A stretch of 64,000 nucleotides of DNA from Mytilus californianus (Eukaryota). The notes below the pieces were generated by a model. That model was not told the DNA's origin. It did not search any database and saw nothing but the letters and a program-made list of their open reading frames with translations. Both the position numbers and the translations under genes were made by a program. Location of the stretch: positions 17,546,001 through 17,610,000 of the forward strand of contig NW_026262734.1 in assembly GCF_021869535.1 (NCBI RefSeq). Reading direction: 5' to 3'. Positions 22,920 through 60,651 of this stretch are shown in pieces. The first letter of the stretch is position 1, and each line of letters opens with the position of its first letter.

Positions 22920-22998
22920 TTATTTTCTCTGTAGATACTGATATGTAGATAGTGATATTGAGTCATGGATGGATACCTCATATCTTTTGTTTTTTTTT
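22920..22998 (-). CDS. Gene C candidate exon 5: cytoplasmic tail (R)KKNKRYEVSIHDSISLSTYQYLQRK*
   Basis: Acceptor TCAATCTTTAATAG| is in phase 2, matching the transmembrane-exon donor; basic juxtamembrane residues follow. Confidence 0.45.
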
Positions 22999-23170
22999 CT
23001 ATTAAAGATTGATCAGCACGAATCAATCCAATTGCAATGTTACATATTTTTCATTTACTTTTTTTGAAAGTTTTTTTTAATTTGTCTTATACTGCCGTTT
23101 CTTACATTCTCTTGTTCTCTTGAAATTATAATATTGGAAATATTATGTGTATGCATGAGTGCAGTATTAC

Positions 23171-23231
23171 CTGCAGTATATAATACATGCTGCCAAACTA
23201 ATCGGAATCAACAACAAAAGGAACAGCAAGT
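23171..23231 (-). CDS. Gene C exon 4: transmembrane helix (Y)LLFLLLLIPISLAACIIYC(R)
   Basis: Acceptor TATTGTTTTATTTGCAG|, donor CAG|GTAATA, 61 nt, phase 1 to 2. Confidence 0.8.
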
Positions 23232-23324
23232 CTGCAAATAAAACAATATAAAATACAACGAAACACACAATTAATTTCTAATTTCCTCTTAATTATTCTT
23301 AATTGTGTAAATATATATGACCAT

Positions 23325-23557
23325 AACCCGCTGCATTTGTTTGCCCCTGTCCTAAGTCAGAAACCTGATGTTCAGTGGTTGTCGTTTGTTGATGTGGTTC
23401 ATAAGTGTTTCAAGTTTCTCGTTTTTATACAGATTAGACCGTTGGTTTTCCTGTTTGAATGGTTTTACACTAGTAATTTTTGGGGCCCTTTATAGCTTGC
23501 TGTTCGGTGTGAGCCAAGGCTCCGTGTTGAAGGCCGTACCTTGACCTATAATGATTT
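23325..23557 (-). repeat. SINE-like repeat
   Basis: CCCCTGTCCTAAGTCAG core and GTGTTGAAGGCCGTACC, as in the other copies. Confidence 0.7.
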
Positions 23558-24588
23558 GTAAATGAAGTGTTAACTGGCTGTTTGTGTGTCACTTCTGGTA
23601 TATATTCGAGGCGAGATGTAAGGATAAAAACATACTATCTGTACCCTAAATACAACCAAGTCTGGTTGAGGCACATAACATTTGCAGCCAGAAGTAATTA
23701 CTCCGTACATACCAATGCACGAATATGGCTGTTTCCGTATTAGCAGGACAACGTCATTAGTTTAGCAAATACTGATTTATAGAATTTAGGCCAATTTGAG
23801 CATATCATATAACAGACAATTAGGCTAAGCAATATCTTCACTAACTCTTTTAAAAAAGCACTGCAAAAATACTAATTTTATTCCCTTAAAAACGAGACTC
23901 ATTCATGATTGAACAACCACATAATAAGTTAAACACAATTACAAAAAAACTATACAGATAAAGGAAAAGATGTTTTTCAAGAAATATATCTGTTCTAATT
24001 TTGTATTTGCTTTTTAAATTGTTATACTGTGAAACTCTCGCAAACACATACGATCAAGCCGTTACAGTCCAACAACACAGGGCTTTTAAAATGAATAAGG
24101 CTGACTAAAAAGGCTGACACAATAAATAATTGATTAGACTACAATGATCCATTTAATTATTTTCTTTTCTACATTGAAATTCTTTTCAACTTTGTTACGG
24201 TTCTTAGATGTGTCATTGGGTACTATTTAGTCCAACACCCGATATTTGACTTATTTGGAATGAGTGCATATGCTTTGTGTTTTTGTTATCTATTCTATAG
24301 ATATTTTACATAAAATACTTTAAATTTTTCTGCATTTATTTAAATGGTAGGTAGTTAAATGTATATTTTCAAATAGACTAATCGAAAGTAAAATTAATAT
24401 TTGGTAGGGATGATGCCTCAATTAGGTGCAGGTACCTGTCTCAAGTCATGACTTTCGTCAGTGGCTGTCTTATGTCATGGTATCATTTTCACGCACCGAT
24501 GCTATTCCATTCTTTGTTCCAATTTATAAACAAGAGATAATTGACCTCGAGTTGACATAAAATCAAAAAACTGTTGGACTAAACTTAC

Positions 24589-24888
24589 ATAGAAGATTAC
24601 TATTGTCGGTGTCAGGAGTGTGATCTTCAGTTGTGGGAGTTACCGATTCCACTGATGCTGTCGTCATTTCTATAACTGAACTTTTAGACAAGTACAACAA
24701 TGATGTAGCCCCAATGCCAACCGAAGTTGACTTATACAAAGAAGATGTTTGAAACTGAGATGTACTTATGGAAGATACTCCAGTTGCAGTGTAAATTAAA
24801 GTTGGTGTTGGACATAGGTTCAAGTCGGTAACACATTGCCCGTTATAACATCTGTGTAAGCCTTCCGGACACTGGTTTGGATCTGTAC
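24589..24888 (-). CDS. Gene C exon 3: half-LDLa CPEGLHRCYNGQCVTDLNLC plus Ser/Thr stalk
   Basis: Acceptor ACATTTTAG|, donor T|GTAAGT, 300 nt, phase 1-1. T+GT completes the sixth LDLa Cys. Confidence 0.9.
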
Positions 24889-25411
24889 CTAAAATGTACA
24901 CTAAAATGAGATGAGAAGAACAGGATTCCTATACAAAACCTAAAAAACTGAAAGTTTGCTTGTAGGAGCTTAGCTTTAAATATCTCCGTACTTCCTGAAT
25001 ATGCATACGATATATATTTGCCACTGAACATCTTATCAACCAAGCAATCTTTAATCTGTAGTTTGAAGAATTCAAACTTTTTGAGATATTATATTAAACA
25101 AATTCAAATTTCCAAAATGTCGCAGTTAAAAATGGACACTCTCGTATAACAAAATTGCTTTACATTTGCTAATACTAATAATAGGCGTATACAGAACTTT
25201 ATTTCTGAAAATATAATAGCCGTAGGTTTAAAATAACGGTCTAATACATCGGCTAATTAACCAAGAGTAATACTGAAAAGTTAGTACTAAGTCTTTTGAA
25301 ATAACAATTTCAAAGTGTTTAGTATAATCAATGTTGACTTGAATTTTCGGTTTCTTTTTGTTCTTGTTTCACGATTTCAATCCTTGCATTGTATTGCCCC
25401 GTTGCTTGTAT

Positions 25412-25559
25412 TGGGTTCGTGTTGCTCAGTCTTTAGTTTTCTATGTTGTGTTTTGTGTACTGTTGTTTGTATTTTGGTGTTTTTCTTTTTTGCCATGGCG
25501 TTGTCAGTTTATTTTTGACTTATGAGTTTTTAAGTCCTTATGGTATCTTTCGACTATCT
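25412..25559 (+). mobile_element. Naiad 3'-end copy
   Basis: GGGTTCGTGTTGCTCAGTCTTTAG...GGTATCTTTCG matches the pseudo-LTR. Confidence 0.85.
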
Positions 25560-26293
25560 GTACGTGTTTATTTATTTGTTTTTCTAAAAAAACATATTGT
25601 TTATATGCTCAAACCTGAACATTTGAAAAAATAGGATTGTTAAAATACATTGACACGTTAGGAGCTATCTTGCCGAAAGAGAAGAAAATAATAGAAAAAA
25701 TCATGAAAGTTCAACTTTGCATCAGGCAGTTTGAACCTTATTTTCTAGATAGTTTGTTAATTTTCGAAATGTAAGTTATAAATCATGTCAATACCACAGT
25801 AAAATATACTTAGCATTTAAATGAATAAACTGAAATCAATGTATGAAACAGAGCACTAGCTAGGAGGCCCTTTTCAAGCGTTCTATAAATATGTTGGCAT
25901 ATGATAGGGCCATTTTTGTGCCGTCTTTCTGCAGATAGTGTTCGTCATTAAAAGGGAAGCTGTTGTTCTTTAGCAGCTAATTCCAAAAGTGTAATCAGGC
26001 ATTCAGAAAACAATTTTCTATAAATAAGATGAAATAATGTCGTCAAAAGGTTTATTGGTGTGGCTTATAATAGAAGGGGAGCTACTAAGTTATATACAGA
26101 TACTTGTATTTTCTATTTTCCGCCAATGCCATATAGGGGAAGTCAATCTTATTGCAAAATTAAAACGATCACCGTTTGCTGCGTTTTGATTCATTTGTTT
26201 GGTTGTTTTTGGAGGGACTGTCACAAAAATAAGATTAAGTGCAGTATATCACAAACTTTGAAAAACTTATCTGGTTATAGTCACTTTACTTAC

Positions 26294-26408
26294 AGTTCAC
26301 TTCATCAGAACGATCTCCACAATCGAAGTTATCGTCGCACCTTTTCTCACTAGAAACACATTCTCCATTTGAACATTGAAACTGGCTTGAAGTACATGAA
26401 TCTACTGT
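26294..26408 (-). CDS. Gene C exon 2: LDL-receptor class A module
   Basis: [38 protein letters not shown](C); acceptor TTTTTTGTTTTGTCCCATAAAG|, donor T|GTAAGT, 115 nt, phase 0 to 1. Confidence 0.92.
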
Positions 26409-27082
26409 CTTTATGGGACAAAACAAAAAATAAAATACTAAGGCGAGGTGTACGTAAACGAACAGCAAATAAACGAGCTTTATAGTTGTGTTTATGTTAC
26501 ACACTAATGACATAAATAAAAGATGTGAGTAATACGTCAATGGGACCAAAACCAAACGACACAATAAAGCTAAAGATATCTTTAGCTTTAAATCGCCCTC
26601 AGTCTAAACACATGGGGAATAAATACCTAAGACAGAGTCGACTTACCCTTTCCTTCAAATTATCCACAGAACTAAAAAAATAAATACGATGTAATATAAA
26701 CAGCCACTGACTAAGTTGCTTTGCACTTGGTACAAGCTTATGAACATGTGGCGGGGTTAAACAAGGCATTGAGGTCTGAACTCTTCCAATTTTAAAGTGG
26801 ATTTGTGTCATAACGAACGGTACATATACACAAATGAAAGTGCAATACAAATCATTAAAGAGAAAACCTTACCTCTAGTTCTGTTGTGCTGATACAATAT
26901 GTTACTTTACACGTATTCAAGCAAAAACATTATAAACGTGGTTGATTTTCGACAATGACGATTGGAGTGCAGACAAATGAAAGAAACTTTTTTGTCTTAC
27001 GTCAAACTATAAATTATCGAATAGTTGTTACGCCGCATTACTTGCTATGTGCCTGTCCTTATTCAGGAAACTGCAATTTATT

Positions 27083-27240
27083 TAAGAATTGAATGCTTCT
27101 TTTTGTAAATTTATTGGGGTGTAAAAACGTTGGACGAAGTACATTTTGTATGAAGCGCGAAGCGCTGCATTCTAAAAATGTGCGCACGACCAACGCTTTT
27201 ACAACCCTATAAAATTACGAAAAGAAGCATTCAATACTTA
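27083..27240. mobile_element. Long-hairpin head of an interspersed repeat (Crypton-like, tentative)
   Basis: Imperfect 51-bp arms at 27083-27133 and 27190-27240 around a centre containing GAAGCGCGAAGCGC. Confidence 0.55.
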
Positions 27241-27862
27241 TTATTACATTTTTTTGCTAGGATCATAAAAACGCGATTTCTATCAAGTTTTTATTTTATT
27301 TACCTGAGAACTTTATTGTGGAAGCTCGTGTCATCGTGAATTTTACATTTCATTGTGAAAAGAAGGTTAATTTCATAATGACGTGAATTGCTGTTAGCCA
27401 ATCAAAACAACGTATTATAATGAAGCATACATGCAATTTAATTACTAGTTTGTTATGGATTGTCGTCTGTCATATTTGTTTCTTTTTTATTGTTTTGGCC
27501 GTTGTTTTTTGTTTTTTGTTTTTTGTTTTGTGTTTTTTTATCACGCTTAGAAGCTAACTATACTGTAAAGGTTTTGCTCATTATTGTAAATCGACGATGA
27601 CCTATAATTGTTTACATCAACAATCTTTGGTCAGTAATAGGTGCATTTTGTTTTGTAATCGTCTCTGAAAAACATAAACCGTCTTTTTATTTAAATAAAA
27701 AAAAACATGAATACCTTAGCTAAGACCATGATTCAATACAAATGATCAAGCTTATTTTTTCCTTAATAATCCTATAATCATATTTTGATAAAAACAAAAT
27801 ACAAAGGGCAGTTCCTTAAGACTTGTTATTTTTTAATCATAAATCCATATATATATTTAATA

Positions 27863-28100
27863 TATACACAAGTCAAAATTGAAAACAACGTTCAAACCTA
27901 TGATTGCGTTGGATAAAAACCGCAATTTTTATACGTGTGCATGTAAAACAAATTTCTTGGTAGAGGGGTCTAAATACAGCACAAACAACATTTTCCAAAA
28001 GACCAAAATAGTGAAAAAGTAAATTTTAACAAAACGCATTTGACTAACAGGTCGAACAACGGATGTTCTTAACCCTGCTGACTGCCATTGGCGATTGCAT
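27863..28100 (+). repeat. ~300-bp repeat, copy 1 (inverted relative to copies 2 and 3)
   Basis: Reverse complement of 28820-29057 and 29360-29596. Confidence 0.9.
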
Positions 28101-28745
28101 ATATTAAACGAGACAAATACCAGATCCTAATCTGCGTCGTTGCCTTCATATGATTGAGGTAGAATATGCACTAAAGGATAACTGATAAAGAGGACTTCCA
28201 AAACTAAGTTCAATTGGAATTGAATAAAGACCTTATTTATTAAAATGTCTTTGTAAAATGAGTGTGGCAAACTTTTAATGTATTGGCAAACAGAAAATGA
28301 CTACAGATATTTATGAATTGCTTACACGCTACAACTCAACATTATCAAGCTCCAGACCAAATATAAAAATATTTGCTTCAATAGAAGTCTAGAAAAGATT
28401 GATTTCAATATGTGACATTTAATGATGGACAAGAGTCCATGTCAGATGTTAAACTCTAACTCGTTTCGAGACCTTTTCAATGTATTCTTCTGGAGGAGAA
28501 AACTTCAAACTGTAACAAATGGTATAAACGGAGAAACAAATGTATATCAATATCAAATATGGAAGTACATTTAGATAAATGTTTAGAAAAAAAAAGTTGA
28601 AATTTAACACAATTAAATCATATTTATTGCACTATATGATGTTTAACAATTTACTTAGCTTACATCATTGGGCTAAGTTTCCTTGTGTATTATTTATTAG
28701 ATATCCAGGGAGAATATCTAATAATATATTTATATATATATATGT

Positions 28746-29057
28746 AAGTTTATTGTTTTCTGTTTGGTAATAAATTAATAATAAGATCTATTTTGTTACA
28801 TCTGGCGATCCGTTTATTTGGTAATCGCCAATGGCAGTCAGCAGGGTTTAAGAACATCAGTTGTTCGACCTGCTAGTCAAATGCGTTTTGTTAAAATATA
28901 TTTTTTGACTCATTTGGTCTTTTGGAAAATGTTGTTTGTGCTGTATTTAGACCCCTCAGCCAAGAAATTTGTTTTGCATGAACACGTATAAAAATTGCGG
29001 TTTTTATCCAACGCAATCATAGTTTTGAACGTAGTTTTCAATTTAGACTTGTTTATA
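28746..29057 (-). repeat. ~310-bp repeat, copy 2
   Basis: Near-identical direct repeat of 29285-29596 (offset 539). Confidence 0.9.
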
Positions 29058-29196
29058 TTTTTTCGTTTGGGCTTGTATCATATTTGCCTTCGGGTTTATA
29101 TGATCTATTCATCCTATTTAGACTCTTCCAAAATTCAAGAGTCTATCCTTAATTGAGGTAAATTATATGACCTTCCAAATACCGTTTCGATTCCTA

Positions 29197-29240
29197 ACAT
29201 CACTGAAGAGACATTAATTGTCGAAATCCGGATATGGTGT
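29197..29240 (+). ncRNA. Minimal type I hammerhead ribozyme, intact core
   Basis: Stem I ACATCA/TGGTGT; CTGAAGA; stem II GACA-TTAAT-TGTC; GAAA; palindromic stem III TCCGGA; cleavage triplet ending UA at 29233-29234. Confidence 0.85.
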
Positions 29241-29284
29241 ACAAAATTTTGCACCTCATGTTTGCGGTATACCATCTTTTCCGC

Positions 29285-29596
29285 AAGTTTATTGTTTTCT
29301 GTTTGGTAATAAATTAATAATAAGATCTATTTTGTTACATCTTGTGATCCGTTTATTTGGCAATCGCCAATTGCAGTCAGCAGGGTTTAAGAACATCAGT
29401 TGTTCGACCTGCTAGTCAAATGCATTTTGTTAAAATATACTTTTTCACTCATTTGGTCTTTTGGAAAATATTGTTTGTGCTGTATTTAGACCCCTCTACC
29501 AAGAAATTTGTTTTGCATGCACACGTATAAAAATTGCGGTTTTTATCCATCTAAATCATAGGTTTGAACGTTGTTTTCAATTTAGACTTGTTTATA
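29285..29596 (-). repeat. ~310-bp repeat, copy 3
   Basis: Direct repeat of 28746-29057. Confidence 0.9.
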
Positions 29597-30232: not shown

Positions 30233-30286
30233 ATATAAATGAAAGATGACAAAGAATGTGAAGCAACTTATGGCAGTAGTCTTCAT
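30233..30286 (-). CDS. Gene C exon 1: signal peptide MKTTAISCFTFFVIFHLY
   Basis: ATG at 30286, 18 mostly hydrophobic codons, donor TAT|GTAAGT in phase 0, matching the acceptor at 26408. Confidence 0.7.
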
Positions 30287-37641: not shown

Positions 37642-38976
37642 ATGGCTAATGATGTAGAAGCATTGTCTAGAAAAATGACAAATGATAGAATTAAGAGGTT
37701 GATTGAGGGCCTACGTGGTGTAGACGCAGAATATAGCAGTGAACTTAAAACTCAAAATCAAAACAAAGAAAAAATGGCGTCCTATAGTGAAGCACTGTCC
37801 GGAAAAAATAAAAACACAGAACAAAACAATGACAACGTAATCAATACAAATGATAGTCAACCCAACTCAACTTCAGCTTCAACTTCAAGTAATTTTGTAA
37901 AACCCATATTTCTAAAAGATAGTGACGTGCATGGTTCTATGAAACCGGAGCTGTCTATGTGGATAACCAATGTCGAAATTTATATAGCTGTCGGAGAAAA
38001 GGTCCCCGCGGAATGTATTAAAGGCATCCAACGCATTAGAGAAATGTGGCGTATCTACATGGATAATGAGGAAGACAAACTGTCGCTGTTAGTGCAAGGT
38101 ATAAACCTTCGTGGTAGGCAGGTCCCCTTGCATTCACAAAACCCTCATAATCCATCTAACTTATTACAACCTGATACGATACGCATAAAAGTGAAAAACG
38201 TTCTTCTCTCAGCGGATGATGGACAGATTCATCGTGCCTTAACTTTACAGGGGTGTAATATTCAGGCATTTTCTCGAGAAAGGCTCAGGATTGATGGAAA
38301 AGTAACAAATTGTGAAACAGGAGATAGGTTAGTGATCAGTAAATTACTTGAAAAACCCATTCCAAGAAATCTTCAGATTGGGAAGTACTTAGCAAGAATT
38401 TTTCATTCAGGTCAACCCGAGTTTCAGGGAAGAGCAAATTTAGTGAGCTACGAAGGTGTCAAAAAGTGTCACAAATGTCTCAAACCAGGTCATGTAATGT
38501 ACAATTGTCCAAATGATTGGGTTTGTAGGATATGTAACATAAGTGGACACAAAATGATAGACTGTCCAACAGAACTACAGACTCATAATGGCATGGAACA
38601 AGAAGTCAATGATAAACATGAAGAGACAAATACAGAACAAGTTTTAAACGAAAACAGCAAAGATGATGAACACACAGAGGTCAATGAAGATGAACCTGTA
38701 ACAGAAAAACAAAGTAAAACTAAAGAGAAGCATAACACAGGAAAATTGGGCTCTAAAAAAAGTGGATTGAAAACAAATGACGATAATGCTGTAAGGTCAC
38801 AGCAATCTCTTGACAAATTCATGAGAACTCCAAACAATCAGAGAAGTCTTGGTTCTAGGACTCATTGTCATATACACCTCCAACACCACCAGAGGCACTT
38901 CATGATAGAACAAGTGACAGTCATGGACCAAAGAAAGCAAAAGCAAAATAGTAATCAAGTGTGTTTAACATCATAA
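37642..38976 (+). CDS. L1/Tx1-clade ORF1-like nucleic-acid-binding protein (RRM-like region plus two CCHC knuckles); no ORF2 follows
   Basis: 444-aa open frame; CHKCLKPGHVMYNC and CRICNISGHKMIDC; acidic low-complexity C-terminus; probable 1-nt deletion near 38863. Confidence 0.8.
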   Translation: MANDVEALSRKMTNDRIKRLIEGLRGVDAEYSSELKTQNQNKEKMASYSEALSGKNKNTEQNNDNVINTNDSQPNSTSASTSSNFVKPIFLKDSDVHGSMKPELSMWITNVEIYIAVGEKVPAECIKGIQRIREMWRIYMDNEEDKLSLLVQGINLRGRQVPLHSQNPHNPSNLLQPDTIRIKVKNVLLSADDGQIHRALTLQGCNIQAFSRERLRIDGKVTNCETGDRLVISKLLEKPIPRNLQIGKYLARIFHSGQPEFQGRANLVSYEGVKKCHKCLKPGHVMYNCPNDWVCRICNISGHKMIDCPTELQTHNGMEQEVNDKHEETNTEQVLNENSKDDEHTEVNEDEPVTEKQSKTKEKHNTGKLGSKKSGLKTNDDNAVRSQQSLDKFMRTPNNQRSLGSRTHCHIHLQHHQRHFMIEQVTVMDQRKQKQNSNQVCLTS

Positions 38977-40235: not shown

Positions 40236-42156
40236 TAAAAAAATGAGTCTATAATGATACATGAGTTCTTATTTTGATTTGTATTAACGTCATCACAACC
40301 TCAACCGAGTAAACAGATTATCTATCGCAAAGTATCTAAACAATCATAATATACAACACAACATAACCGCTGACGAGGTTCATTTCCCGACTTGAAATAG
40401 GCACACACTTGGATATCGGAGTTTATTTTATATAATTTCAAACATAGGATGTTGCATGATTGAACATTTAATAACAATCATTACATGAACAGTTTACATC
40501 TTTTTAATAACGGAATAACAGATAAGAAAACACAGATAAAAACAAAACTATACTGATAATATTATACCATATCAAAGAATGCTCACAGTTCATAAAAACA
40601 AGCTAGATATGAAATTATGCCGTCCGACGCTCTAATATTGGTGGCAATACTTCAAGAAGATTTCAGTCAGTAACTGTAGAACCGACGTCTTGCAATATTC
40701 AGACAATACAGCAAATAATGCATGACAGAAAAACCAAATAAAGTCGATCAAGTTTTCTTTCTAAGTGTAATTTGAACTTTTGAGTACTTATCTTTAAGAA
40801 AACTGACTAAATATCACAACAACAGTAAACATATAAAATGTATTATGACAGCAAAAAGTCATTAAACTAAAATGACTGAGTTTTGAAAGGGATGGAAAAT
40901 AATTAACAATGTAAAAGATGAATAAAAAACGTGTCTAGTAAAACGTTTTTAGAGGAAGAATTGTTCTGTACATAAGAGGACAATTGGGAAAACACATCTT
41001 GAACTAGCATACAATAATACAGAAAAAAAACTATAGTGTATGTATTCTTCCTCTTTGTATACTAAACATAAATTTCATCAGGAATATATGATTTATTCAA
41101 CGAACGTAACTTATCTGATACATTAAAGTCCATTTATAATTTCAATTATTTTATTGTTGCTGCATTTCCTGCATTTTCTTTTCTTTTTTTTTTTTGACTA
41201 TGTATTTATCCTTTCGTTTCCTGTTAAGAAAAAAGATAGGATAAGTTATTGAAAGAAAATGATCGTTCGTAAATAGACTCCAACATACAATACATCTCAG
41301 GTAAGTACATTTGGTTATTCATAATTTGAAAGTTTCTTTGTAATGTTTTGTTTACAATCTTTGAATCCTTTTGGTATCTTCTTTTATTACTCAAAGATTC
41401 GTCAAATATTTTTTACGATGTGTCATGATTTTAACTTACATTTTTCATAAATTACCATAATCTTGTATAATCTAACCGAAAGTGCGCTTTACAATACCTG
41501 TCTTTACATATTAAGGGTTTCTAAAAACAATTTGGAAAATAACTAAGCTACAATTGTACCAATATAATCAATATTTTCAACAAAGAGATCTTTACAGGCA
41601 ACATAACTGTACTTGATTATTACATGTATAAGAATAAAAATGAACTTAACATTTATTATACCTACACCTACATAATGCAACTCATTTTATTCAGGATTAA
41701 CAATCACAATTAAACCTTTGCTCTTAAAAATGTAAAAACCAAACCTTTATATTGATTGCTTGTGTTCTTCACCCGGTACAGATATAGTACTGTAAGCCAT
41801 GTTATATCCGGAAACATTAACATCGTAAATAATGAAAAACTAAGAGTCTCATAGTTACTAACCAAAGGCCTTAGATGTAGAATTCCCTAACCAATAAACT
41901 ATAAATAGATCTTCAGGTAACAAGTATATGCAGTTAAGGACAACGCTAAAAAAATTGGTTAGGGGAAGACCAGAGAGACCTTAACTGAATACTTTGTTGG
42001 AATGGACAAGCAATGTTGGTTCTGCAATTTTGAAATGCATTGAGAAATTTTGTACTATATAAACTAACGGTATTTTGTATTTTGGATACGCCTTTGATAA
42101 TTCATTGTCTAAAATGTCGTTTATATAGTATTCATTTATTTGTTGTTTACCTATAA

Positions 42157-43246: not shown

Positions 43247-43281
43247 TGAATCAGACCGATGCGGTTCTTCACATTATTTAC

Positions 43282-43369
43282 CTCATTCGTCGTTTCCTGT
43301 ACTTGGTCAAGTAGACTACTCCGATGCTAAAAACTATAACTGGCAACAACGCAAGGAACCATAAAAATT
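43282..43369 (-). CDS. Gene B exon 4: transmembrane helix (K)FLWFLALLPVIVFSIGVVYLT plus KYRKRRM(R)
   Basis: Acceptor TTTCTATATTTTTCAG|, donor AG|GTAAAT, 88 nt, phase 1 to 2. Confidence 0.85.
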
Positions 43370-44108: not shown

Positions 44109-44624
44109 TATAGGTATTTTCAGTATTATTTGGAACATGACCTCCATGATTGGGTGTTGTTACTAGTATTGATGATTCCGTTGGTTTTGTGACAGAACTT
44201 GTGATAGTATGATATGTGGTATTATTTCCTCGATTGTCGAATTTCATATATGAAGACGTCTGCCAATGAATTGTGCTTTTTGAAAACAGTATTGACACTG
44301 AGGATAAGTTGAATACTGATGACAGTGTCGGTTTATTATGCGGTGATAAGATGCCAAGGGTCTGTGCCGAATAATATTTTGAAGGCATGTGTTTAGTAAT
44401 AGTTGGCGATCCAGATATTTCTAAATCAGACGTTAATGAAGAATACAGTTGAGTATAACGAACGGTGGATGTTAAAGCTGATGTAGATGAAACATAAAAG
44501 TTTACTTCTCTTGATGGCGATATCTGAACTTCAGATGTTTGCACAGGACACATATTCTTGTTGGCAACACACATTCCAGTTTGACACCTATACCCACCTT
44601 CTGGACAATTAAGTGCGGCGTCAC
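44109..44624 (-). CDS. Gene B exon 3: half-LDLa CPEGGYRCQTGMCVANKNMC plus Ser/Thr stalk
   Basis: Acceptor AATTTATTTAAG|, donor A|GTAAGT, 516 nt, phase 1-1. T+GT completes the LDLa Cys. Confidence 0.9.
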
Positions 44625-45009: not shown

Positions 45010-45124
45010 AATTGATTTCATCAGACTTGTCTGCACATTCAAAGGACAAATCACACTTATTTATACTTGAAACACATTGTCCATTTGCACATTGAAATTG
45101 ACCTTCATTGCATGATTCTATTAT
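45010..45124 (-). CDS. Gene B exon 2: LDLa module (absent from the ORF track)
   Basis: IIESCNEGQFQCANGQCVSSINKCDLSFECADKSDEIN(C); acceptor TGTTTTATTTATATAG|, donor T|GTAAGT, 115 nt, phase 0 to 1, same length as the gene C exon. Confidence 0.92.
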
Positions 45125-50008: not shown

Positions 50009-52389
50009 ATGTCTATTAAAAATAAATAAAATTCCATGTTTAGTGTGTTTATTTTACCTGGATTAACGGGATACTGATCTATCATCAGTATGTTACATAG
50101 TACAGGTATGCTGTGTTCCTTCTGCTTACTTTATAAAATTTTCTTAAAATCTGCGGACACAAGTTCACTTCCGACTGTGTAATATTGCTGATTGCATATT
50201 TTCAGGCACAACCCAGCAAACACTTTTCAATTTCTAAGGTTACTCAACAAATTTATTGAGTTATTTTAATTCACATACTGCCTGTTATTTCGGAATAAAT
50301 TTCTTTTGTCAATGGAACAATCAAAGATATAGGCATATGCCAATGTTCAATTAATATTATTTTAGTTGTTGATCACGTCATAATTGGTTTGAGCTGTTTG
50401 CTATACGTCAATGAAGCAGTACCCAACGACACAAATAACCAAGCTTCTTGCAGAGCTCAACATATTGTTTCGCTTTTGCTTATTTGATTGCTTATATGGA
50501 TCAACACGGTTTTTAAACCTGAACCGTGAATATATGGTGCATTTATTTGATAATAGGTTGAAATTTACTGTTCATATAATGTTAAACTTTCCCTGTCATA
50601 ATTGCATTTTTCGATGAACAAATATATTCATATATCTTTATTACAAATATCTAAAACAATATTACATTTCGATGTATGACACATAAATTATTTAGTTTGC
50701 TTCATTCAAAGAGCTTTCATGATTATTTTCAAGGCATAATGATAATGATTATAATGATACTAATAAATCAGGTCCACATGAAGAGGAGTGGAAAAAGTCT
50801 CAGCTACATACTCATCAACAGACAAGTAATATAATGTAAGTATTAAAAGAGCCTACAAGCAGTTGTTAAATCAATTGATCATCAATCAAAAGTTGAATGT
50901 ATTTTATTTGTTGTCTTTGAAGGGTTTTCCCGAAATCTGAATAACACTCATTGTAAATTACAAATGAAATAAACAATATCATAATAATATCATTATTAAA
51001 AACGTAGCAAGTGGGTTGTACCCCCAACCTCTAGTAGTGGCATGGACACATGTATATCTAAACAAATGACCGACAGTATTATGACTTTGATATCGCTGCA
51101 AAACCCAAATTTCCTATATTTGAAGCTTTTAGAAAAAGAAACCGCAATTCTTTCATCTGAACACCTTTAATTATTTTTTTAAACGATTGTAGAGTATGCA
51201 TTAAGGTGAAAACATATTATCCAGCTTTGTCAACAAAATGTACGACGATCCTTGCTATACGTACGAAAGATTTAGATTGTTAATGTTCATTTACATTTAT
51301 TAATATCGTGTGGGACGGTCTGGTTTGCTCTACAGTACCACAACATGATGTTGTTAATCTGTTGTGTCTATCGTATTACACGAGGGTCAAATAATGTTTC
51401 CAAAGATTGTTCATGCCTTCCTTTGAATCAATTATTCTTGCATACATGATCTGTTCTTCTGAAAGAGTGAAACATTTTTGTTATTTATAAAAAATGTGTT
51501 TTCTTTGTAAAAGATGATTATTTAGTTCTATTTGTGTAATCTTAGTTTATGATGATTTTAAAGATAGATACATGTAACTGAAAATTTAAAAAAAATACTT
51601 GAAAGTACCAATGCATTAATTTTTCGATTCATTTATAACGTTATTTGTAAATTTTGATCAAAACCTACAATTCAAGGATAAACATACCTTAATGACAGAA
51701 GTTGTAACCAATAATTTATCAGTAGTTTATTTGATAATCTTGTACTTCTCGCCTAAAATAATAATAATAAAAAATTTCTTTATGCATAAGCATCAGTACA
51801 CAAAACAATGAGCTAGAGAATTTGAAATGATTTCAGATCAAATAACACAGAAAGATATGCCGCCAGCGACTAGTAGTTTTAATATAAAATGCACCCAAGA
51901 ACGTCAAAATGTGGTTAGATGGAATTTCCTAGTCCCGGGTTTGTAAGAAAGTAATAAGATTGGATGAGTAAAATGCATAGTGATTGCTTAGCTGTATGCA
52001 TATACTTTTGAAATTGCTAGAAAGGTATGGACATGACGTCCCTATCAATAGACCTTATATATTGTCCTTCCTAACTTCTCCATAAAATATTTTCGATAGT
52101 CATATTTTGTTCCTTTTTGTGTCCTATCCCTCTTTTATTGAACGTATTAACATTTCAAACTTATTTCAATTTCTAGACGATAATATACAGTTGTTGTTTT
52201 TGTCAATACTAAAAAAAAAACACGCGCGAGCGCGGCTTGAAGACTACTTGAAATGTTTATGGTAATACACAGCTTGTGTTCGTGTTTCTCAAACTGTTTT
52301 ATGCACTGATGCATTATGTTGATTGTTTTTATTAGTTTGTCAGTTCTTCTTCCATAGGAGTTTGAATGTCTAATTAGTAGCTTCTGTAT

Positions 52390-53032: not shown

Positions 53033-53109
<77 letters not shown>

Positions 53110-53600: not shown

Positions 53601-53682
53601 AGTGCGGAAATGTGGTTACTACAATGTTTTCAACCCCTTCACGTTTGTATTGGGTTTTCGATTTTCAACTATTTTGCCTCGG

Positions 53683-53726
53683 GCATCACTGTACAGACAG
53701 TAATTGTCGAAATGCGCATCTGGTAC
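53683..53726 (+). ncRNA. Minimal hammerhead, 5' core mutated
   Basis: GCATCA-CTGTACA-GACA GTAAT TGTC-GAAA-TGCGCA-TC-TGGTAC. Confidence 0.7.
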
Positions 53727-54579
53727 AGTACAATTGGTACCGTTTAATTTATTGGAACAAACCATTAGAACTTATGTACAGCCATCTACTAAGGGGTTAG
53801 ACAAATACCAAGAAGTCTGTTTGTATGGTGGAAGAAGCTGAAATACTCGTTGAAAACCACCAGGTTTGCCAGATGAGAACAGATGAACCGAAGAAATGTC
53901 TGTAGATTGATCTCTTCGTCAAATTCGGGCCACCCAAACCATCCGAGGTCCCCAAGAACCAATTCAAGTTCCGACATAGGATCATAAGCACTGTAACCAT
54001 CGGTATTGACCACTAAGCCACACTTTACGAATTTTGAAAGAAATCAGACCAATTCGTTAAAAAAAAATAGCGATCCCTATTTATATGTTATTTTTTTCAT
54101 AGAATTGAATGATAGGTCTTGAACACTACTAATGGCGATTTTGAGACAGCACATTAATACTCTAATGTAATACAGCGATTTAAGAGCTTCGTAACAATGG
54201 CCTTATCGCCAAAATTGGCCTAAGACTAAACATGTTTTTAAAAAAATCGTACAACCTCAAAGTAACAACGTATATGCCATTTGTTTTATTACATCTCAAT
54301 TTCATCACATTTATAATACAAAAATCCTAAACCGCACTATAGAATATTAGATGCTGCACTGTTATTTTTTTTAGAAAGAAAGAAGACGTAGGAGGGACGT
54401 CATGTAGATATTTATCCTACGACAATAAAAAAACGCACATAGAGATCAGCATAAGTTTACCATAGGTCAAGCACCAAACCTCCCGAATCTATTAAAATAT
54501 TGATACGGAATGATTTTACAAAATACCGTTATAGCAACGGTACTTATTTTATGACACCGCGTTTCCACAATCACACATA

Positions 54580-55364
54580 CAGTGGCGATCACTTATAACC
54601 TCTCATCAAATCTGTCAGAATCTCTCAGGAGAACTGTTCTAGGGCAGTATGTAGAACTGTCATCCTGACACCTTTTAGACAGTTCTAGCTAGAACAGTTC
54701 TTACCTAGAACTGATTTGGTCAGTTCTACCTAGAACTGATCCTGACAGTTCTACACTAGAACAGTTTTAGACAGTTCTACCTAGAACTGACCAAATCTTT
54801 GGTCAGTTCTACGACTAGAACAGTTCTACGGCTAGAACAGTTCTACGATTAGAACTGATTTGGTCAGTTCTACGGCTAGAATTGATTTAGTCAGTTCTAT
54901 CCATAAACAGTTTTAAGAACTCTTTGTCTTAAATATAAATAAGTCAAAAGAATATAATATATATTAAAAAAGTCTCATCACAGCTCTGTTTTAACATTCA
55001 ATGACGTCATTTAGAACTGTTCTACAATCCTGACAGGTTTGGTCAGTTCTACGGCTAGAACAGTTTTAGACAGTTCTGTTAACAGTTCTACGGTTAGAAC
55101 TGATTAAGTCAGTTCTGCTGACAGTTCTACGGTTATAACTGATTTGGTCAGTTCTGTTGACAGTTCTACGACTAGAACTGATTTGGACAGTTCTACCTAG
55201 AACAGTTTTAGACAGTTCTACCCTAGAACTGATCCTGACAGTTCTACTTAGAACAGTTCAAGGGTAGAACTGTTCTAGGTATAACTGTTCTAGGACAGTT
55301 TAGAACAGTTCTATGACAGATTATTCTGACAGTTCTAATGAGAGGTTAGAAGTGATCTCCACTG
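54580..55364. mobile_element. Tc1/mariner-type MITE (785 bp) with palindromic minisatellite interior
   Basis: TA at 54578-54579 and 55365-55366; TIR CAGTGGCGATCACTTATAACCTCTCAT versus CAGTGGAGATCACTTCTAACCTCTCAT; interior made of TAGAAC(A/T)GTTCTA-derived blocks. Confidence 0.85.
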
Positions 55365-56380
55365 TATGTCCCCTTGGTTTCTTCTTCTATGAAAATCACA
55401 AACTTTATACAAACATTGAACCGCTTAAAACAAAAATTATGAATTAAATGATTGGCCATCAGACTCAATTCCTTGAACGACAAAATATTAAGATCTGATA
55501 ATCGACAAGATATAGTAATAACACGTGCCAGACATATAAATATTTGGCGACTGTGTGTAGACACAAGGATGTGCAATAAAAGTTTATTAAAGCACTAAAC
55601 TCTTCAATCCAGTGTTAAAGACAACAAAAACAAAAGTTCACGTAAAGCAGAGGTACGTGATTTCATATGAAACTGCTTGAAGTAACTCAAAACAACTTTA
55701 AAATGATTATGTCACTAAGCTGCTGAAATCTATATGATTTAGGCAATGGAACATCACCATCAAATATGGAAAATTAATGTGTCCAATTATAAAATAAACA
55801 AATGTGTAAGGACAAATGTACACACATCTGCGAAGCATGACCCTTTTAACATAAGGATGTTGATAGAGGAGAAACAACCCCAAATTATATAAGGAAAACA
55901 TACACATTCATGCAAAATTAGACAATAGAAAAATTAAAAATAAGCTAAATCAATTACTGTTTGACAGTCAAATAATCATGGGTCTGTTATAAGATTTCGA
56001 GAACTTTTGATTGGTTTGTTCCTGATATTCGAATATCAGATTGTTCTTGTAGAGAATTGATTAATTGAATCATTACAACGAACATATGACAAGACAGATT
56101 GGCTTAAAAATACTTTACCGTTAACTATTTACTGTTAAAACTGAACGTCCTATAGTATACACATTTTAGGGATTAACTTTAAACTAGGAAAATAACAAAA
56201 CATCATCTAAGTCTAATTTATGGTTGCAGGCGAAGTTTAAAAAATCGATGCAGTCGCTTGCAATCCGTTAACAATTCATGCGATGACCAAGATGGTTCAT
56301 CGTGACTTGTGTATTGGTGTTATGTTTACGAGTTTGGACATTAGTGAACTGATATTGTCTTAAATTCAGTTATACTTCAC

Positions 56381-56474
56381 CTCCTATATTTTCTGCAATT
56401 TTCTACAAATATCTTTCCCCAAACGGCAGTCAGGAAATACATGAGTAAAATGCCTGTGCACCAAATTATAACTT
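56381..56474 (-). CDS. Gene A exon 3: transmembrane helix (K)VIIWCTGILLMYFLTAVWG plus KIFVENCRKYR(R)
   Basis: Acceptor ATGATTTATTTACAG|, donor AG|GTGAAG, 94 nt, phase 1 to 2 like genes B and C. Confidence 0.7.
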
Positions 56475-56663
56475 CTGTAAATAAATCATTTAAGCATATA
56501 ACATACATTTTTGTCACTATCGGGAATATTTGGTCTGCTAATTTTTTTATTACATTCTTAAATGGACAGGACTACAAGGTAAATATACATTTTGATATAG
56601 AATCATCATATGTTACGTCGGGCACATTGCTAAGCCAAATTCCAAATACAATAAATATCTAGA

Positions 56664-56760
56664 AAAAAGAGGCAAAAGATACCAACGGGGCATTCAAACT
56701 CATAAGTCGAAAATAAACTGACAACGCCATGGCTAAAAAAGAAAAACAGTACACAAAACA
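56664..56760 (-). mobile_element. Naiad 3'-terminal fragment
   Basis: AAAAAGAGGCAAAAGATACCAACGGGGCATTCAAACTCATAAGTCG is the reverse complement of the pseudo-LTR end. Confidence 0.8.
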
Positions 56761-57249
56761 TCCAAGTTCCATCCATTTAAAAGTACACAAAACATAGAAG
56801 TTTCGTCCATTTAAAAGACAAAACTATCCGTATTTGAATGATGTCTATTTTGTATTTACTAGTACGCAGTGTATAGTGTATACTACGAATAATGATTTAA
56901 TAATTATATATGCACCTCCGTTTGATTTGTTGCTGTCATGTGAATCACAGCAGACTCACTAACTGCTCGACCAAATTCGTGGTATTGATACATATACAAA
57001 TATATGACTGCAAAACGTATATTAAAAATAAAAATTAGTTGTTAATAGATACATGTATAAGAAGATGTGGTATGAGTGCTAATGAGACAACTCTCCATCC
57101 AAGTCACAATTTGTAAAAATAAACCATTATAGGTAAGGCTTCTTCTGTAACCCACTAGCTCTAGAAAATCGGCTTTGTCAATTTAAATATGAATTGGTGA
57201 AGAAATATTTTTATTTTGGTGTTAACACCGCTTTTATTCTGTAATAGAA

Positions 57250-57583
57250 TATCTGTTTCACGATGGATATGTTCCAATTGTCGTAACCACAATCCATCAT
57301 CATTTTCCCGAATGTGATATACCGAATTAGACATATGACCGGGTTTGCACTTTCATGAGCAGCACGACGGCTGCCACATGTTGGACAGGATTTGCTGACC
57401 CTTCTGGAGCTCCTATGAATATCCCCGGTGTGTGGTGAGGTTCGTGTTGCTCAGTCTTTAGTGTTCTATGTTGTGTTTTGTATACTGTTGTTTGTCTTTT
57501 AGTCTTTTTGTTTTGACATGGCGTTGTCAGTTTGTTTTCGACTTATGAGTTTCAATGTCCCTTTAGTATCTTTTGCCTCTCTT
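57250..57583 (+). mobile_element. Naiad 3'-end copy
   Basis: Matches 10620-10958. Confidence 0.85.
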
Positions 57584-58108
57584 GTGTGAAAATATCTGGT
57601 GTGGTAAGTAATGCAATTCACAATCAGAGTTACATGGGAGATATACATAGATATATGTGTTGGTAAAACTCCTAAGGGTACAAATATCAGTAATTTGTTT
57701 ACATTACAATTAATCAAAAGATATGTGCATGGCAAGCGTATTAAACTAATGCATGTAAAGGTAGATATGTGTACGTGAGACCATATACAGCATTCTACAG
57801 AATATCGATACCAATCGACATCACAATGTGCACTGTGATTTGGTTTTTGTTCATTAGAAAAAAAGCTGTGATTATGTCAATAAGTATCTGGTGGAAAGTT
57901 GTCTTATTGGAAATTTTACCGCATCTTCCTATTTCTATATAAATATATTTAATAGGTGCACAGGGTGAAATTTTTCATAATGCAAACTATTTTGTCAACA
58001 CTACAAGCTGACCTGTCGATTTCCCTTTAAATGCTATGGTAATTGTTGGCAAAGACATTTTCAAAAACGTGTTTTGTTCCCTCTGAAATGGATGTTAATT
58101 ATACCTAC

Positions 58109-59143
58109 TGTAATAATTTTCATCAGGAAAATATCCCATTATTGTTGGTGTTTCTGTTGATAATGTTACCGGCGTTGGCGTCTTCAGCGTTGAAGGGAAC
58201 AAAGTTGATTTCGATATAGTGCGTTCGATATTTGACTCCGTTATGTCTCTGGTCATGTATTTTGACGTTGTTTCTGAAATAGTCTCTGTTATTGCTATCT
58301 GGTATGAAGGTTGCAGTACTGTACTGGGCGATTTGATTTGTTCTGACTTTAAAACTGCTGTGTGATACGTATACACATTTTGAAAGAATCGATGTGAAGT
58401 TTTTGTTTTCACTGATAACAATGTGGTCATGGGGTTCTTTGATCGTTTCACATTCAGAAACGAATAAACCAGATACAGGGCAGAGTAAGACAATTCAGAT
58501 TGTTTAAAACTTTTGGTTTTATCATCCATACTTGAATGGAAATGTGATCGATCGTATGAAAGTCCCATTATATACGACCTAGATGTTGTCTTCAGTGAAG
58601 ACTGAAGCTTCGTGCTATAGTTCACAGATTTTTCTCTTTCAAGTTTTAAAATAGATTGACTGTATGAAGTTTTCATTTGAGAACTTGACGAAGGCATGTT
58701 GAATTCTGAAGCTGTCGAATTCAAAAACATTATGGTGGAAGGGGTTTCTTTACTAAACGGTTTCACTATCTTTGTGGAATGGATTATTGCTACTCCATTT
58801 ACAGTTGTGTCGTTAATTTGTATTACAGATGTAGATATAGTTTCTTCTATAATATCTGATGCAGTTGACTTTGCGTATGTTAAGATTATATTATCAATTG
58901 TACTGGAAATTTGCGTTTCCTTTGACAGTGTATATGAATGTATTAGGTTGTCGCTTGACGTTGGCTTTATATTTAACAATAACTTGTCTTGACTAGCGTG
59001 TTCTGCAGTCGTAAAATATGTTTGAATATTTCTTGATGATAACTGAACTTCGGATTGAGGTGTATAACAGTCACTATATTTGGGAGCGCAGTTTCCTGCC
59101 TTGCATTTCACCAACCCCTCCGGACATGGTGCAGTAATTGTGC
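58109..59143 (-). CDS. Gene A exon 2: half-LDLa CPEGLVKCKAGNCAPKYSDC plus long Ser/Thr mucin stalk
   Basis: Acceptor TCTTCTTTATAACAG|; T+GC completes the LDLa Cys; donor A|GTAGGT; 1035 nt, phase 1-1, open throughout. Confidence 0.85.
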
Positions 59144-59385
59144 CTGTTATAAAGAAGATTCATGTTTAAGCCTGGAGTCATTTAAATGCATTAAAACCGA
59201 ATTGATTTAGCTATATTGATAGAAAAAGGCCAAATAAGCTTTTAGTTTCAGTTTATGCGGCAATAAAAGTAGACGACAGAGAGTTTTGATTTATAGTTGA
59301 CATACAATTAAGCAATTAAATATTGTAATGCCAAACAAATTATTTTACAACAACCTCATTGTGAAAGGCTCGCTTTTGACACTGT

Positions 59386-59745
59386 AAATAAAGGCAACTG
59401 TAGTATACCGCTTTTCAATATTCATAAATCGATTAAGCGAAAACAAATCCGGGTCACAAACTAAAACCGAGGGAAACACATCAACTATAAGATGAAAACA
59501 ACGGAACAACAGAAACACTGAACTGCAACAAAAACAAACGCCAACATACATAGACACGGATTACTTGATAACAACTGCCATATTCCTGACTTGGTACATG
59601 ACATTTTAAGAAAAAAATGGTGGGTTGAACCTGGTTTTATGGCTAGCCAAACCTCCCGCTTATATGGCAATGTTAAAAATACCGTTAAAATGACAACATT
59701 ACGTGACAGGAATACAGTACAAATAAACGCAAGAACACTCAGGAC
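59386..59745 (+). repeat. Interspersed repeat sharing the CCTGACTTGG core
   Basis: AATAAAGGCAACTGTAGTATACCGC...CCTGACTTGGTACA...AACCTCCCGCTT; related to 11080-11240. Confidence 0.65.
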
Positions 59746-60494
59746 AGAGAAACACATAAATAAATAATATAATAGTACATTACAACATGTTAACCACAGA
59801 ATAACAACGGACACCTCCCATGAATCCACAACAGCACACCAGAACACTGTTTGTCTTTGTTTCCTATATGATTTTGAAATTATCAATTTTGTTATGTTTT
59901 GGGTTTCCAAAACAATTAGGTTACAACACCCTTCACGAAATTTGTTTTTTAAAACTCACTTCTCGTGTTCATTGGTCTTTTTATTTTTTTCTTGTCGATT
60001 TTACATTTTTATTTGGATGAACTGTAATAGAACATAACATATGATTTCTTCGTGTTAAATAAACTTTTTGGAGGTCGCTTTAACATGTTCCTTACTCGGA
60101 AATCGACTACTTGTACTAGACAATGACGATGGAATGGTGCATTTATAACAAGATTCTGCTTGATAACCTGTTACTTATTCATTTTTGAATATATTGCATC
60201 TTAATGTTGTCTATCCCGTTAACGCTTCATGTTCCAGAGAATACAAAAAATAAATATGATTGGTCCTTAGTTACTGCCTTCTGGAATATTAAATCTCTTA
60301 ATATTATTTGAGGTTGTTATCGGTTATTTAAAGCAACATACACTGCACCTATGATAATTTTCTGTCCAATAACTTGCGGATCCCCTTGGACCATCTTACA
60401 TTGTTCAATATCTAACGAAATATCTACACATTGTTTACAAATTAGTATATATTAATAAATATGCTGTGTTATAACATCTGATACATGAACTTAC

Positions 60495-60651
60495 AATTCA
60501 CTTCATCAGATCTGTCTTCACAATCAAAATCGTTATTGCATATCAATGTTAAGGAAACACATTGTCCACTTGTACACTGAAATTGATCATCATTACAGGA
60601 TTCTACTGCTAATATATACAAAAGCAACGAAAAGGAGTTGTACCTTTTCAT
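60495..60651 (-). CDS. Gene A exon 1: putative leader MKRYNSFSLLLYILA plus LDLa module
   Basis: VESCNDDQFQCTSGQCVSLTLICNNDFDCEDRSDEVN(C); donor T|GTAAGT. The LDLa part is firm; the 5' boundary (ATG 60651 versus acceptors at 60608, 60605 or 60602) is uncertain. Confidence 0.85.

What the first reader, a model, noticed from the sequence alone, without database searches (positions are those of the whole stretch)
22920..60651. Hidden tandem family of three divergent LDLa / half-LDLa / mucin single-pass receptor genes
Seen: three minus-strand exon sets share one architecture with matching phases: signal (0), 115-nt LDLa exon (0-1), Cys4 + Ser/Thr exon (1-1), transmembrane exon (1-2). In all three the sixth LDLa Cys is rebuilt across the splice junction (T|GT or T|GC). 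Several exons are invisible to the ORF track. Established: LDLa modules bind Ca2+ through the D-C-x-D-x-S-D-E motif, and small receptors with one or two LDLa modules (CD320/Tva type) act as ligand-uptake or virus receptors. Inference: this is a lineage-specific, fast-diverging cell-surface family (immune recognition, gamete or adhesion role, or pathogen receptor) with no gene name I can assign.
Basis: partly seen in the sequence, partly recalled or inferred. Interest (0 to 1): 0.8.

Follow-up and report, generated by a model that had tools for sequence, protein, structure and literature searches.

The report
Mussel LDLa–stalk membrane receptor gene cluster
Three neighbouring California-mussel genes each encode a small cell-surface protein that holds one calcium-dependent LDL-receptor-type binding module on a sugar-rich stalk; the genes are real, are already annotated as "uncharacterized", belong to a mussel-only family that changes quickly, and have no known function.

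Summary
The window is Mytilus californianus (GCA_021869535.1, JAKFGE010000008.1). Its minus strand carries three separate genes:
- C: LOC127712677, 439 aa
- B: LOC127712678, 284 aa
- A: LOC127712681, 183 aa

The sixth LDLa Cys is split T|GT (A, B) or T|GC (C).

- In C the signal and the LDLa module share one exon.
- Each gene has one more tiny tail exon, so A's coding sequence ends at 22074, not 22920.

Assembled contigs from two runs (their kind, RNA, is only the tool's guess) are spliced exactly at C's predicted junctions and do not run into gene B. The Cys4 module is the first half of a second LDLa repeat (hhalign probability 91%).

Relatives of the non-LDLa part are nearly all Mytilus: at least 7 subtypes in five species. 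Against M. coruscus orthologues, dN/dS is about 0.5 to 1 or higher, yet all ten Cys and the Ca2+-cage residues are invariant.

The most likely reading is a type I membrane protein that captures ligands through Ca2+. The actual function is untested.

This is a new variant of a known kind and of moderate interest. The scan had noted the half-LDLa module on this same stretch (s1-335454).

The parts
60495..60651 (-). Gene C (LOC127712677) exon 1: start codon, signal peptide and LDLa module in one 157-nt exon; ends in phase 1 inside the sixth Cys codon (T|GC)
   Evidence: Pfam LDLa E 2e-10. Exact match to P0013. Spliced to exon 2 in contigs of runs X1 and X3.
58109..59143 (-). Gene C exon 2: Cys4 half-LDLa module, 320-aa Ser/Thr-rich stalk and juxtamembrane motif; phase 1-1
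   Evidence: Joints 59142/3|60494/5 and 56474|58109 in X1 and X3.
56381..56474 (-). Gene C exon 3: transmembrane segment and basic stop-transfer residues; phase 1-2
   Evidence: Joined to exon 2 in X1 and X3 contigs. The same exon is in M. galloprovincialis P0003.
51719..51752 (-). Gene C exon 4: 34-nt cytoplasmic tail end and stop codon
47272..47337 (-). Gene B (LOC127712678) exon 1: signal peptide, phase 0-0
   Evidence: Exact match to P0006.
45010..45124 (-). Gene B exon 2: 115-nt LDLa exon, phase 0-1 (T|GT)
   Evidence: Pfam LDLa E 1e-8.
44109..44624 (-). Gene B exon 3: Cys4 half-LDLa module and 147-aa Ser/Thr stalk, phase 1-1
   Evidence: 100% identical to P0006..
43282..43369 (-). Gene B exon 4: transmembrane segment and start of the polybasic tail, phase 1-2
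   Evidence: Conserved in M. coruscus.
41151..41220 (-). Gene B exon 5: lysine-rich cytoplasmic tail and stop codon
30233..30286 (-). Gene A (LOC127712681) exon 1: signal peptide, phase 0-0
   Evidence: Exact match to P0015.
26294..26408 (-). Gene A exon 2: 115-nt LDLa exon, phase 0-1 (T|GT)
   Evidence: Pfam LDLa E 1e-10.
24589..24888 (-). Gene A exon 3: Cys4 half-LDLa module and 75-aa Ser/Thr stalk, phase 1-1
   Evidence: Pfam LDLa positions 2-22, below threshold.
23171..23231 (-). Gene A exon 4: 61-nt transmembrane exon, phase 1-2
22074..22095 (-). Gene A exon 5: 22-nt tail end and stop codon

Best explanation
These are three separately transcribed tandem paralogues of a Mytilus-restricted family of small type I membrane glycoproteins.

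Each protein has these parts, in order:
- a cleavable signal peptide
- one complete Ca2+-binding LDLa module
- a four-Cys remnant of a second LDLa repeat (its N-terminal hairpin only), after a 5-7 residue linker
- an unstructured Ser/Thr-rich stalk of 75 to 320 residues, presumably O-glycosylated
- a conserved juxtamembrane motif
- one transmembrane helix
- a short basic tail

Inferred mechanism: the stalk holds the LDLa tip away from the membrane. The LDLa acidic/aromatic pocket is fully conserved and would bind lysine or arginine side chains of an unknown extracellular ligand in a Ca2+-dependent way. The ligand could be a host protein, a microbe or a virus. The tails have no NPxY motif, so uptake, if it occurs, is not of the classic LDLR type.

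Apart from the structural residues, the ectodomain changes at close to the neutral rate and is highly polymorphic.

Shown: gene structure, splicing of C, domain homology, taxonomic restriction, substitution pattern. Inferred: signal cleavage, glycosylation, Ca2+ and ligand binding, and the biological role.
For: - Pfam LDLa scores above threshold in all three genes.
- The RefSeq proteins are rebuilt exactly from the window.
- Spliced contigs join C exons 1-2-3 in two samples. One continues 550 nt past the TM exon without reaching gene B.
- The Cys4 module equals LDLa positions 2-22 (hhalign probability 91%, E 1e-6). LDLa plus Cys4 aligns collinearly with LRP2 repeat 1 plus half of repeat 2.
- In 19 family members all 10 Cys, two Phe and the D-x-S-D-E residues are invariant.
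- AF2 gives a signal helix, a low-confidence stalk (pLDDT 25-30) and a TM helix. It shows the same hairpin-plus-turn pattern twice in the tip.
- Fold hits are tandem LDLa pairs.
- Basic residues follow each TM segment.
- C, B and A lie in the same order in M. coruscus, with every exon conserved.
- A profile of exon 3 plus TM finds 16 proteins among 1.84 billion representatives. Of these, 14 look like family members, those with a source name are all Mytilus, and they cover five species.
Against:
- The runs with spliced C contigs are labelled RNA only by guess, though a spliced contig implies RNA. Raw RNA reads of one run (X21) show no coverage of C.
- dN/dS near 1 would also fit relaxed constraint or decay.
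- Structure models have low confidence (pLDDT 44 and 62).
- No tool for signal peptides or glycosylation was available.
- A RefSeq 'LRP2-like' gene with several isoforms spans the whole cluster on the same strand. Some long-range splicing between family members therefore cannot be excluded.
Confidence: 0.6

Rival explanations
1. Cassette or long-range splicing locus. The phase-compatible LDLa exons (all ending in phase 1) and stalk exons (all phase 1-1) of neighbouring paralogues are mixed by splicing across genes. The cluster would then behave partly as one complex transcription unit, not three independent genes.
For: - RefSeq has an 'LRP2-like' gene on the same strand that runs over both ends of every locus fetched, more than 70 kb. 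Its longest product is 234 aa and genes C, B and A lie inside it.
- Its isoform X4 (P0025, 208 aa) joins a D-type signal/LDLa to a stalk exon that is not in the window.
- The paralogue D stalk exon just upstream of the window carries an in-frame stop.
Against: - The only joints seen on gene C are its own canonical ones.
- RefSeq gives A, B and C their own start codons, signals, TM exons and stops.
- The M. galloprovincialis A-type gene stands alone with no overlapping model within 10 kb on either side.
- The spanning model could be an annotation-pipeline chain between similar paralogues.
Confidence: 0.1
2. Decaying duplicates. The genes are recent, functionally redundant copies drifting towards pseudogenes, and the near-neutral substitution rate reflects loss of function.
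For: - Pooled dN/dS against M. coruscus is about 0.9. It is 1.0 in the stalks and 0.8 in LDLa plus Cys4, and B has 3 synonymous against 20 non-synonymous changes.
- dN (0.03-0.05) is close to the intron mismatch rate (5-6%).
- Paralogue D has a frameshift and stop.
Against: - Paralogues are only about 50% identical, yet they keep open frames, all splice sites, all 10 Cys and the Ca2+ cage in at least two species.
- Subtypes A, C and D each have members in both the californianus/coruscus species and the edulis-complex species.
- C is expressed and correctly spliced.
Confidence: 0.15
3. One long multi-LDLa receptor gene (LRP-like) whose internal 'signal' and 'TM' exons are skipped.
For: M. coruscus gene models fuse B and A into one 421-aa 'LRP2' protein (P0014).
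Against: - P0014 skips B's TM and tail exons, although both are conserved in M. coruscus DNA.
- M. californianus RefSeq splits the genes.
- In X1 and X3 the C TM exon is spliced in, and X3 continues into 550 nt of further sequence.
- Pfam finds no EGF or YWTD domains.
Confidence: 0.03

Closest known systems
Tva (avian sarcoma/leukosis virus subgroup A receptor) and LDLRAD-type small LDLa membrane proteins
   Same: A small type I membrane protein whose ectodomain is essentially one LDLa module on a short stalk, with a short tail. LDLa modules of this kind are repeatedly used as virus or ligand receptors. Solved complexes with LDLRAD3 and VLDLR appear among the sequence and fold hits.
   Different: - No orthology is seen; the relatives found are all Mytilus.
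- There is an extra four-Cys half-LDLa module.
- The Ser/Thr stalk is much longer in B and C.
- There are several tandem paralogues.
- No ligand is known.
CD320 (transcobalamin receptor)
   Same: A signal peptide, an LDLa module, a Cys-containing linker region, a second LDLa-derived element, a TM segment and a short tail. CD320 appears among the PDB hits (E 1.5e-6; fold rank 20).
   Different: - CD320 has two complete Ca2+-binding LDLa modules. Here the second lacks Cys5, Cys6 and the whole acidic cage.
- Sequence similarity is lower than to LRP2, VLDLR or LDLR repeats and is confined to the LDLa module.
Tandem LDLa repeats of LRP2/megalin, VLDLR and LDLR
   Same: These are the best sequence and fold matches. 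LDLa plus Cys4 aligns collinearly with LRP2 repeat 1 plus the first half of repeat 2, including the linker length. The Ca2+-cage motif and the aromatic residue are conserved.
   Different: There are no EGF-precursor or YWTD propeller domains, no NPxY tail and no repeat cluster, and the proteins are only 183-439 aa long.
Membrane sialomucins (CD43, CD164, PSGL-1 type)
   Same: A Ser/Thr-rich (31-40%) extracellular stalk that AF2 models only at very low confidence (pLDDT 25-30), a single TM segment and a basic juxtamembrane tail.
   Different: The stalk is proline-poor (4-6%), has no tandem repeats, and its O-glycosylation is untested. The tip is an LDLa module.

Membership tests
LDLa domain (Pfam PF00057) | Profile score above the curated gathering threshold | tested here: met
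   42, 35.7 and 41.1 bits against a cutoff of 24.1 for A, B and C.
LDLa domain (Pfam PF00057) | Six Cys with canonical spacing, plus the acidic Ca2+ cage (D-x-S-D-E) and an aromatic residue | tested here: met
   These residues are invariant in 19 family sequences. In B and in some other members (P0001, P0022, P0028, P0034) the acidic residue just before Cys5 is Glu instead of Asp. In C the sixth Cys is completed across the splice site as T|GC.
Second (half) LDLa module | Homology to LDLa Cys1-Cys4 without Cys5, Cys6 or the Ca2+ cage | tested here: met
   Pfam matches positions 2-22 of 37 with E 0.002-0.1 in 4 of 6 sequences. hhalign gives probability 91%, E 1e-6. The Cys spacing is the same, C-x6-C-x4-C-x6-C. 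The region aligns to LRP2 repeat 2.
Core LDL receptor family (LDLR, VLDLR, LRP) | EGF-precursor homology with YWTD propeller, and an NPxY tail motif | tested here: not met
   Pfam finds no domain other than LDLa. The tails lack NPxY.
CD320 | Two complete Ca2+-binding LDLa modules, and specific sequence kinship | tested here: not met
   The second module is truncated. CD320 ranks below LRP2, VLDLR and LDLR in both searches and matches only the LDLa module.
Tva | A single LDLa module on a membrane anchor, and orthology to avian or mammalian Tva | tested here: inconclusive
   The architecture is similar. No Tva entry appears among the 60 listed PDB matches of 63 found. Only Mytilus relatives were found. 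Orthology is very unlikely but was not tested with a Tva sequence.
Mucin domain | Pro/Thr/Ser-rich tandem repeats carrying dense O-glycans | tested here: not met
   Ser+Thr is 31-40% but Pro only 4-6%. No tandem repeats are found in the stalk exons of B and C. Glycosylation cannot be tested here.
Type I single-pass membrane protein | An N-terminal signal, one hydrophobic helix and a positive-inside tail | tested here: met
   Hydrophobic N-termini and 18-23 residue TM segments followed by Lys/Arg. AF2 gives helices at 6-20 and 152-178 in A. No SignalP or TMHMM tool was available.

The most novel reading that the evidence does not exclude
The family is a polymorphic, rapidly evolving set of LDLa 'bait' receptors engaged in an arms race with a pathogen or a gamete ligand. 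On this reading the identical exon phases let LDLa tips and stalk/anchor cassettes of neighbouring paralogues be recombined by long-range splicing or exon shuffling.

Hints:
- The RefSeq gene that spans the cluster.
- An expressed allele of C that differs from the reference at 18 of 178 positions in exon 1. Of the 11 codons changed by the 13 listed differences, 9 change the amino acid, and about half of the listed sites carry the M. coruscus base.
Probability: 0.12. Interest if true: 0.75.

Novelty: new variant of a known kind. Interest (0 to 1): 0.42.

Why it matters
Small LDLa-tipped membrane proteins are used in vertebrates as nutrient receptors and as entry receptors for several viruses. 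A mussel-only family of at least seven subtypes now has a defined architecture, a defined gene structure and evidence of fast change at non-structural sites. That makes it a concrete candidate set for studies of recognition at the mussel cell surface, whether immunity, symbionts, pathogens or gametes.

The work also documents a half-LDLa unit with two presumed disulfides that is conserved as a module in its own right.

In practical terms, the M. coruscus 'LRP2' models are fusions, and the RefSeq 'LRP2-like' model that spans the cluster needs checking.

Tried and rejected
- **Full-length structure.** The AF2 model of protein A was poor (pLDDT 44), so no fold search was run on it. The tip-only model (pLDDT 62) gave only low-TM matches to tandem LDLa pairs.
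- **Fourth family exon downstream.** A scan of window 1-22074 for phase 1-2 hydrophobic exons gave nothing convincing. tblastn found no further LDLa exon in the window.
- **The 234-aa spanning product.** It could not be retrieved. Isoform X4 is not on record by exact look-up.
- **M. galloprovincialis P0003 locus.** Not on record.
- **Literature.** Three searches found nothing on this family.
- **Rfam.** The whole window gave no hit at gathering thresholds.
- **Orthology of the 46%-identical proteins.** I first took the M. edulis and M. galloprovincialis C-type proteins as fast-diverged orthologues. M. coruscus also has a second C-like gene of that type (P0007), so they may be paralogues. The rate argument now rests only on the syntenic californianus-coruscus pairs.
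- No typed or joined spliced model was sent to any search tool. Searches used exon references or stored protein ids. Exons were joined only inside local scripts, to compare with the stored RefSeq proteins and to count substitutions.


Full report
**Identity of the window**

Exon-wise protein searches identified the source. The stalk exon of the middle gene is 100% identical to XP_052075227.1 of Mytilus californianus. The stalk exon of the upstream gene is 92% identical to a M. coruscus protein. Its own product, XP_052075226.1, sits in the same 90% cluster. Exact look-ups place all three genes on GCA_021869535.1 contig JAKFGE010000008.1, and window coordinate = record coordinate minus 17,546,000. 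The window has no N runs.

**Check of the observation**

A motif scan finds exactly three LDLa-like stretches in the 64 kb, all on the minus strand. Pfam confirms each above its gathering score. Reading the sequence gave acceptors, donors and phases for the following Cys4/stalk and transmembrane exons.

With the first and last exons located through the RefSeq proteins, the concatenated exons reproduce P0015 (A, 183 aa), P0006 (B, 284 aa) and P0013 (C, 439 aa) exactly. All introns are GT-AG. Phases are 0 | 0-1 | 1-1 | 1-2 | 2-0. The LDLa exon is 115 nt in A and B. In C the equivalent 115 nt are fused to the signal in a 157-nt first exon. The sixth Cys codon is split T|GT, T|GT and T|GC.

**Transcription and gene boundaries**

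One read-laying run was allowed, and I used it on gene C (54900-60899). In two samples of one study, single contigs (1384 and 1710 nt) cover 56380-56474, 58109-59142 and 60494-60671. Their joints skip exactly the two predicted introns; CT..AC on the plus strand is GT..AG on the minus strand. The X3 contig continues 550 nt beyond the TM exon, which fits the tail exon plus a 3' UTR. Neither contig enters gene B.

The runs are labelled RNA only by guess, but spliced contigs imply RNA. Raw reads of another RNA run (X21) gave nothing on C's exons, so expression is not ubiquitous or is low. Genes A and B were not tested with reads. They rest on the RefSeq models and on conservation of every exon, in the same order C-B-A, on one M. 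coruscus contig.

The M. coruscus model P0014 fuses B and A and skips B's TM and tail exons, although both are conserved in the DNA. It is a model artefact, not evidence for a multi-LDLa gene.

**The Cys4 module**

It has the same spacing as LDLa Cys1-Cys4 (C-x6-C-x4-C-x6-C) and the same x-G-x-C-[VI] core. Evidence that it is half of an LDLa repeat:
- Pfam matches it to LDLa positions 2-22, below threshold, in 4 of 6 sequences.
- Profile-profile comparison with the family's own LDLa modules gives probability 91%, E 1e-6.
- Against solved structures, LDLa plus Cys4 aligns collinearly with LRP2 repeat 1 plus the first half of repeat 2.
- The tip model repeats the hairpin-plus-turn pattern twice (low confidence).

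The module is thus the N-terminal half of a second LDLa repeat that has lost Cys5, Cys6 and the Ca2+ cage. Similar half units occur as tandem repeats in two unrelated proteins, one from a Ca. Magnetoovum MAG. That suggests the half can fold on its own.

**The rest of the protein**

- The stalks (75, 147 and 320 aa) are 31-40% Ser+Thr, 4-6% Pro and Cys-free.
- The stalk exons of B and C have no tandem repeats.
- AF2 models A's stalk only at very low confidence, pLDDT 25-30.
- A juxtamembrane motif (T-P ... [HY]-x-P-[DN] ... N-x-[YL]) is shared by the paralogues.
- Each TM segment is followed by basic residues. The tails are short (8 to about 30 aa) and have no NPxY.

**Family and distribution**

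A word-seeded profile search found only Mytilus proteins plus generic LDLa hits. A profile of exon 3 plus TM, leaving LDLa out so that giant LRPs would not swamp the list, was scored against 1.84 billion representatives. It returned 16 proteins. Fourteen look like family members, those that carry a source name are all Mytilus, and they cover californianus, coruscus, galloprovincialis, edulis and trossulus. RefSeq names them 'uncharacterized', 'LDL receptor-like' or 'LRP2-like'.

A tree of the 69-aa tip shows at least 7 subtypes. A-, C- and D-types each have members in both the californianus/coruscus species and the edulis-complex species. All 10 Cys, two Phe and D-x-S-D-E are invariant in 19 sequences. 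No paper on the family was found.

**Rate of change, against the syntenic M. coruscus orthologues**

| Comparison | dN/dS |
|---|---|
| Gene A | 0.54 |
| Gene C | 0.89 |
| Gene B, exons 1-4 | about 2 (3 synonymous, 20 non-synonymous) |
| Stalks, pooled | 1.02 |
| LDLa plus Cys4, pooled | 0.80 |

Intron mismatch is about 5-6%. Counts are small, and none of these values demonstrates positive selection.

The X1 transcript allele of C differs from the reference at 18 of 178 positions in exon 1. The 13 listed differences change 11 codons, and 9 of those change the amino acid. About half of the listed variant sites carry the M. coruscus base, so part of the 'divergence' is shared polymorphism. The paralogues A, B and C are about 50% identical in the tip.

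The picture is strong conservation of the structural skeleton and near-neutral, highly polymorphic change elsewhere.

**Context outside the finding**

A fourth paralogue's stalk exon lies just upstream of the window (L004:664-931). It carries an in-frame stop. A RefSeq 'LRP2-like' gene on the same strand spans the whole cluster. Its longest product is 234 aa and its isoform X4 is P0025. None of P0025's exons lie in the window. Whether this reflects real long-range splicing or a pipeline chain between similar paralogues could not be tested. I keep it as a low-probability rival.

**Verdict**

- The structural interpretation is supported.
- The functional suggestions are untested.
- The genes are already annotated but uncharacterized.
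- The family is best described as a Mytilus-specific variant of the small LDLa-tipped membrane receptor theme.

**Method notes**

Exon references and stored protein ids were used instead.

Noticed in passing
L004:664-931 (about 5.7-6.0 kb beyond the window's right end, minus strand): This is the stalk exon of a fourth tandem paralogue (D-type), 63% identical to gene A's. It is 268 nt long, so it does not keep the phase, and it has an in-frame TAG 12 nt before the donor. D-type relatives in other Mytilus (P0017) read the homologous TM exon in a different frame from gene A.
   Followed up: partly
whole window, minus strand (gene range beyond both ends): A RefSeq 'low-density lipoprotein receptor-related protein 2-like' gene has its longest product at 234 aa and isoform X4 as XP_052075235.1 (208 aa). 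It spans more than 70 kb and encloses genes C, B and A. None of isoform X4's exons are in the window.
   Followed up: partly
window 56500-57700 and 59300-59900 (introns of gene C): High-copy repeats reach depths of thousands to hundreds of thousands in the laid runs, on both strands. They show many 'goes back' joints and loose ends near 57056-57134. Rfam gives no hit at gathering thresholds.
   Followed up: partly
window 37642-38976 (+): A 444-aa ORF with CCHC zinc knuckles, gag-like and probably a retroelement remnant, lies between genes B and A.
   Followed up: no
P0027/P0036 (Ca. Magnetoovum MAG) and P0021 (ENA metagenome): These proteins are built from tandem copies of a four-Cys unit that Pfam matches to the first 25 positions of LDLa. 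This is a half-LDLa repeat outside animals.
   Followed up: partly
L005 and L001 (M. coruscus CACVKT020000281.1): Published M. coruscus gene models here are fusions. P0014 joins B to A and skips B's conserved TM and tail exons. P0007 joins a GPCR to a second C-like gene on another contig.
   Followed up: yes
window 60494-60671 (gene C exon 1): The expressed allele in run X1 differs from the reference at 18 of 178 positions, about 10%. The 13 listed differences change 11 codons, 9 of them amino-acid changes. Seven of the 13 listed sites carry the M. coruscus base.
   Followed up: partly
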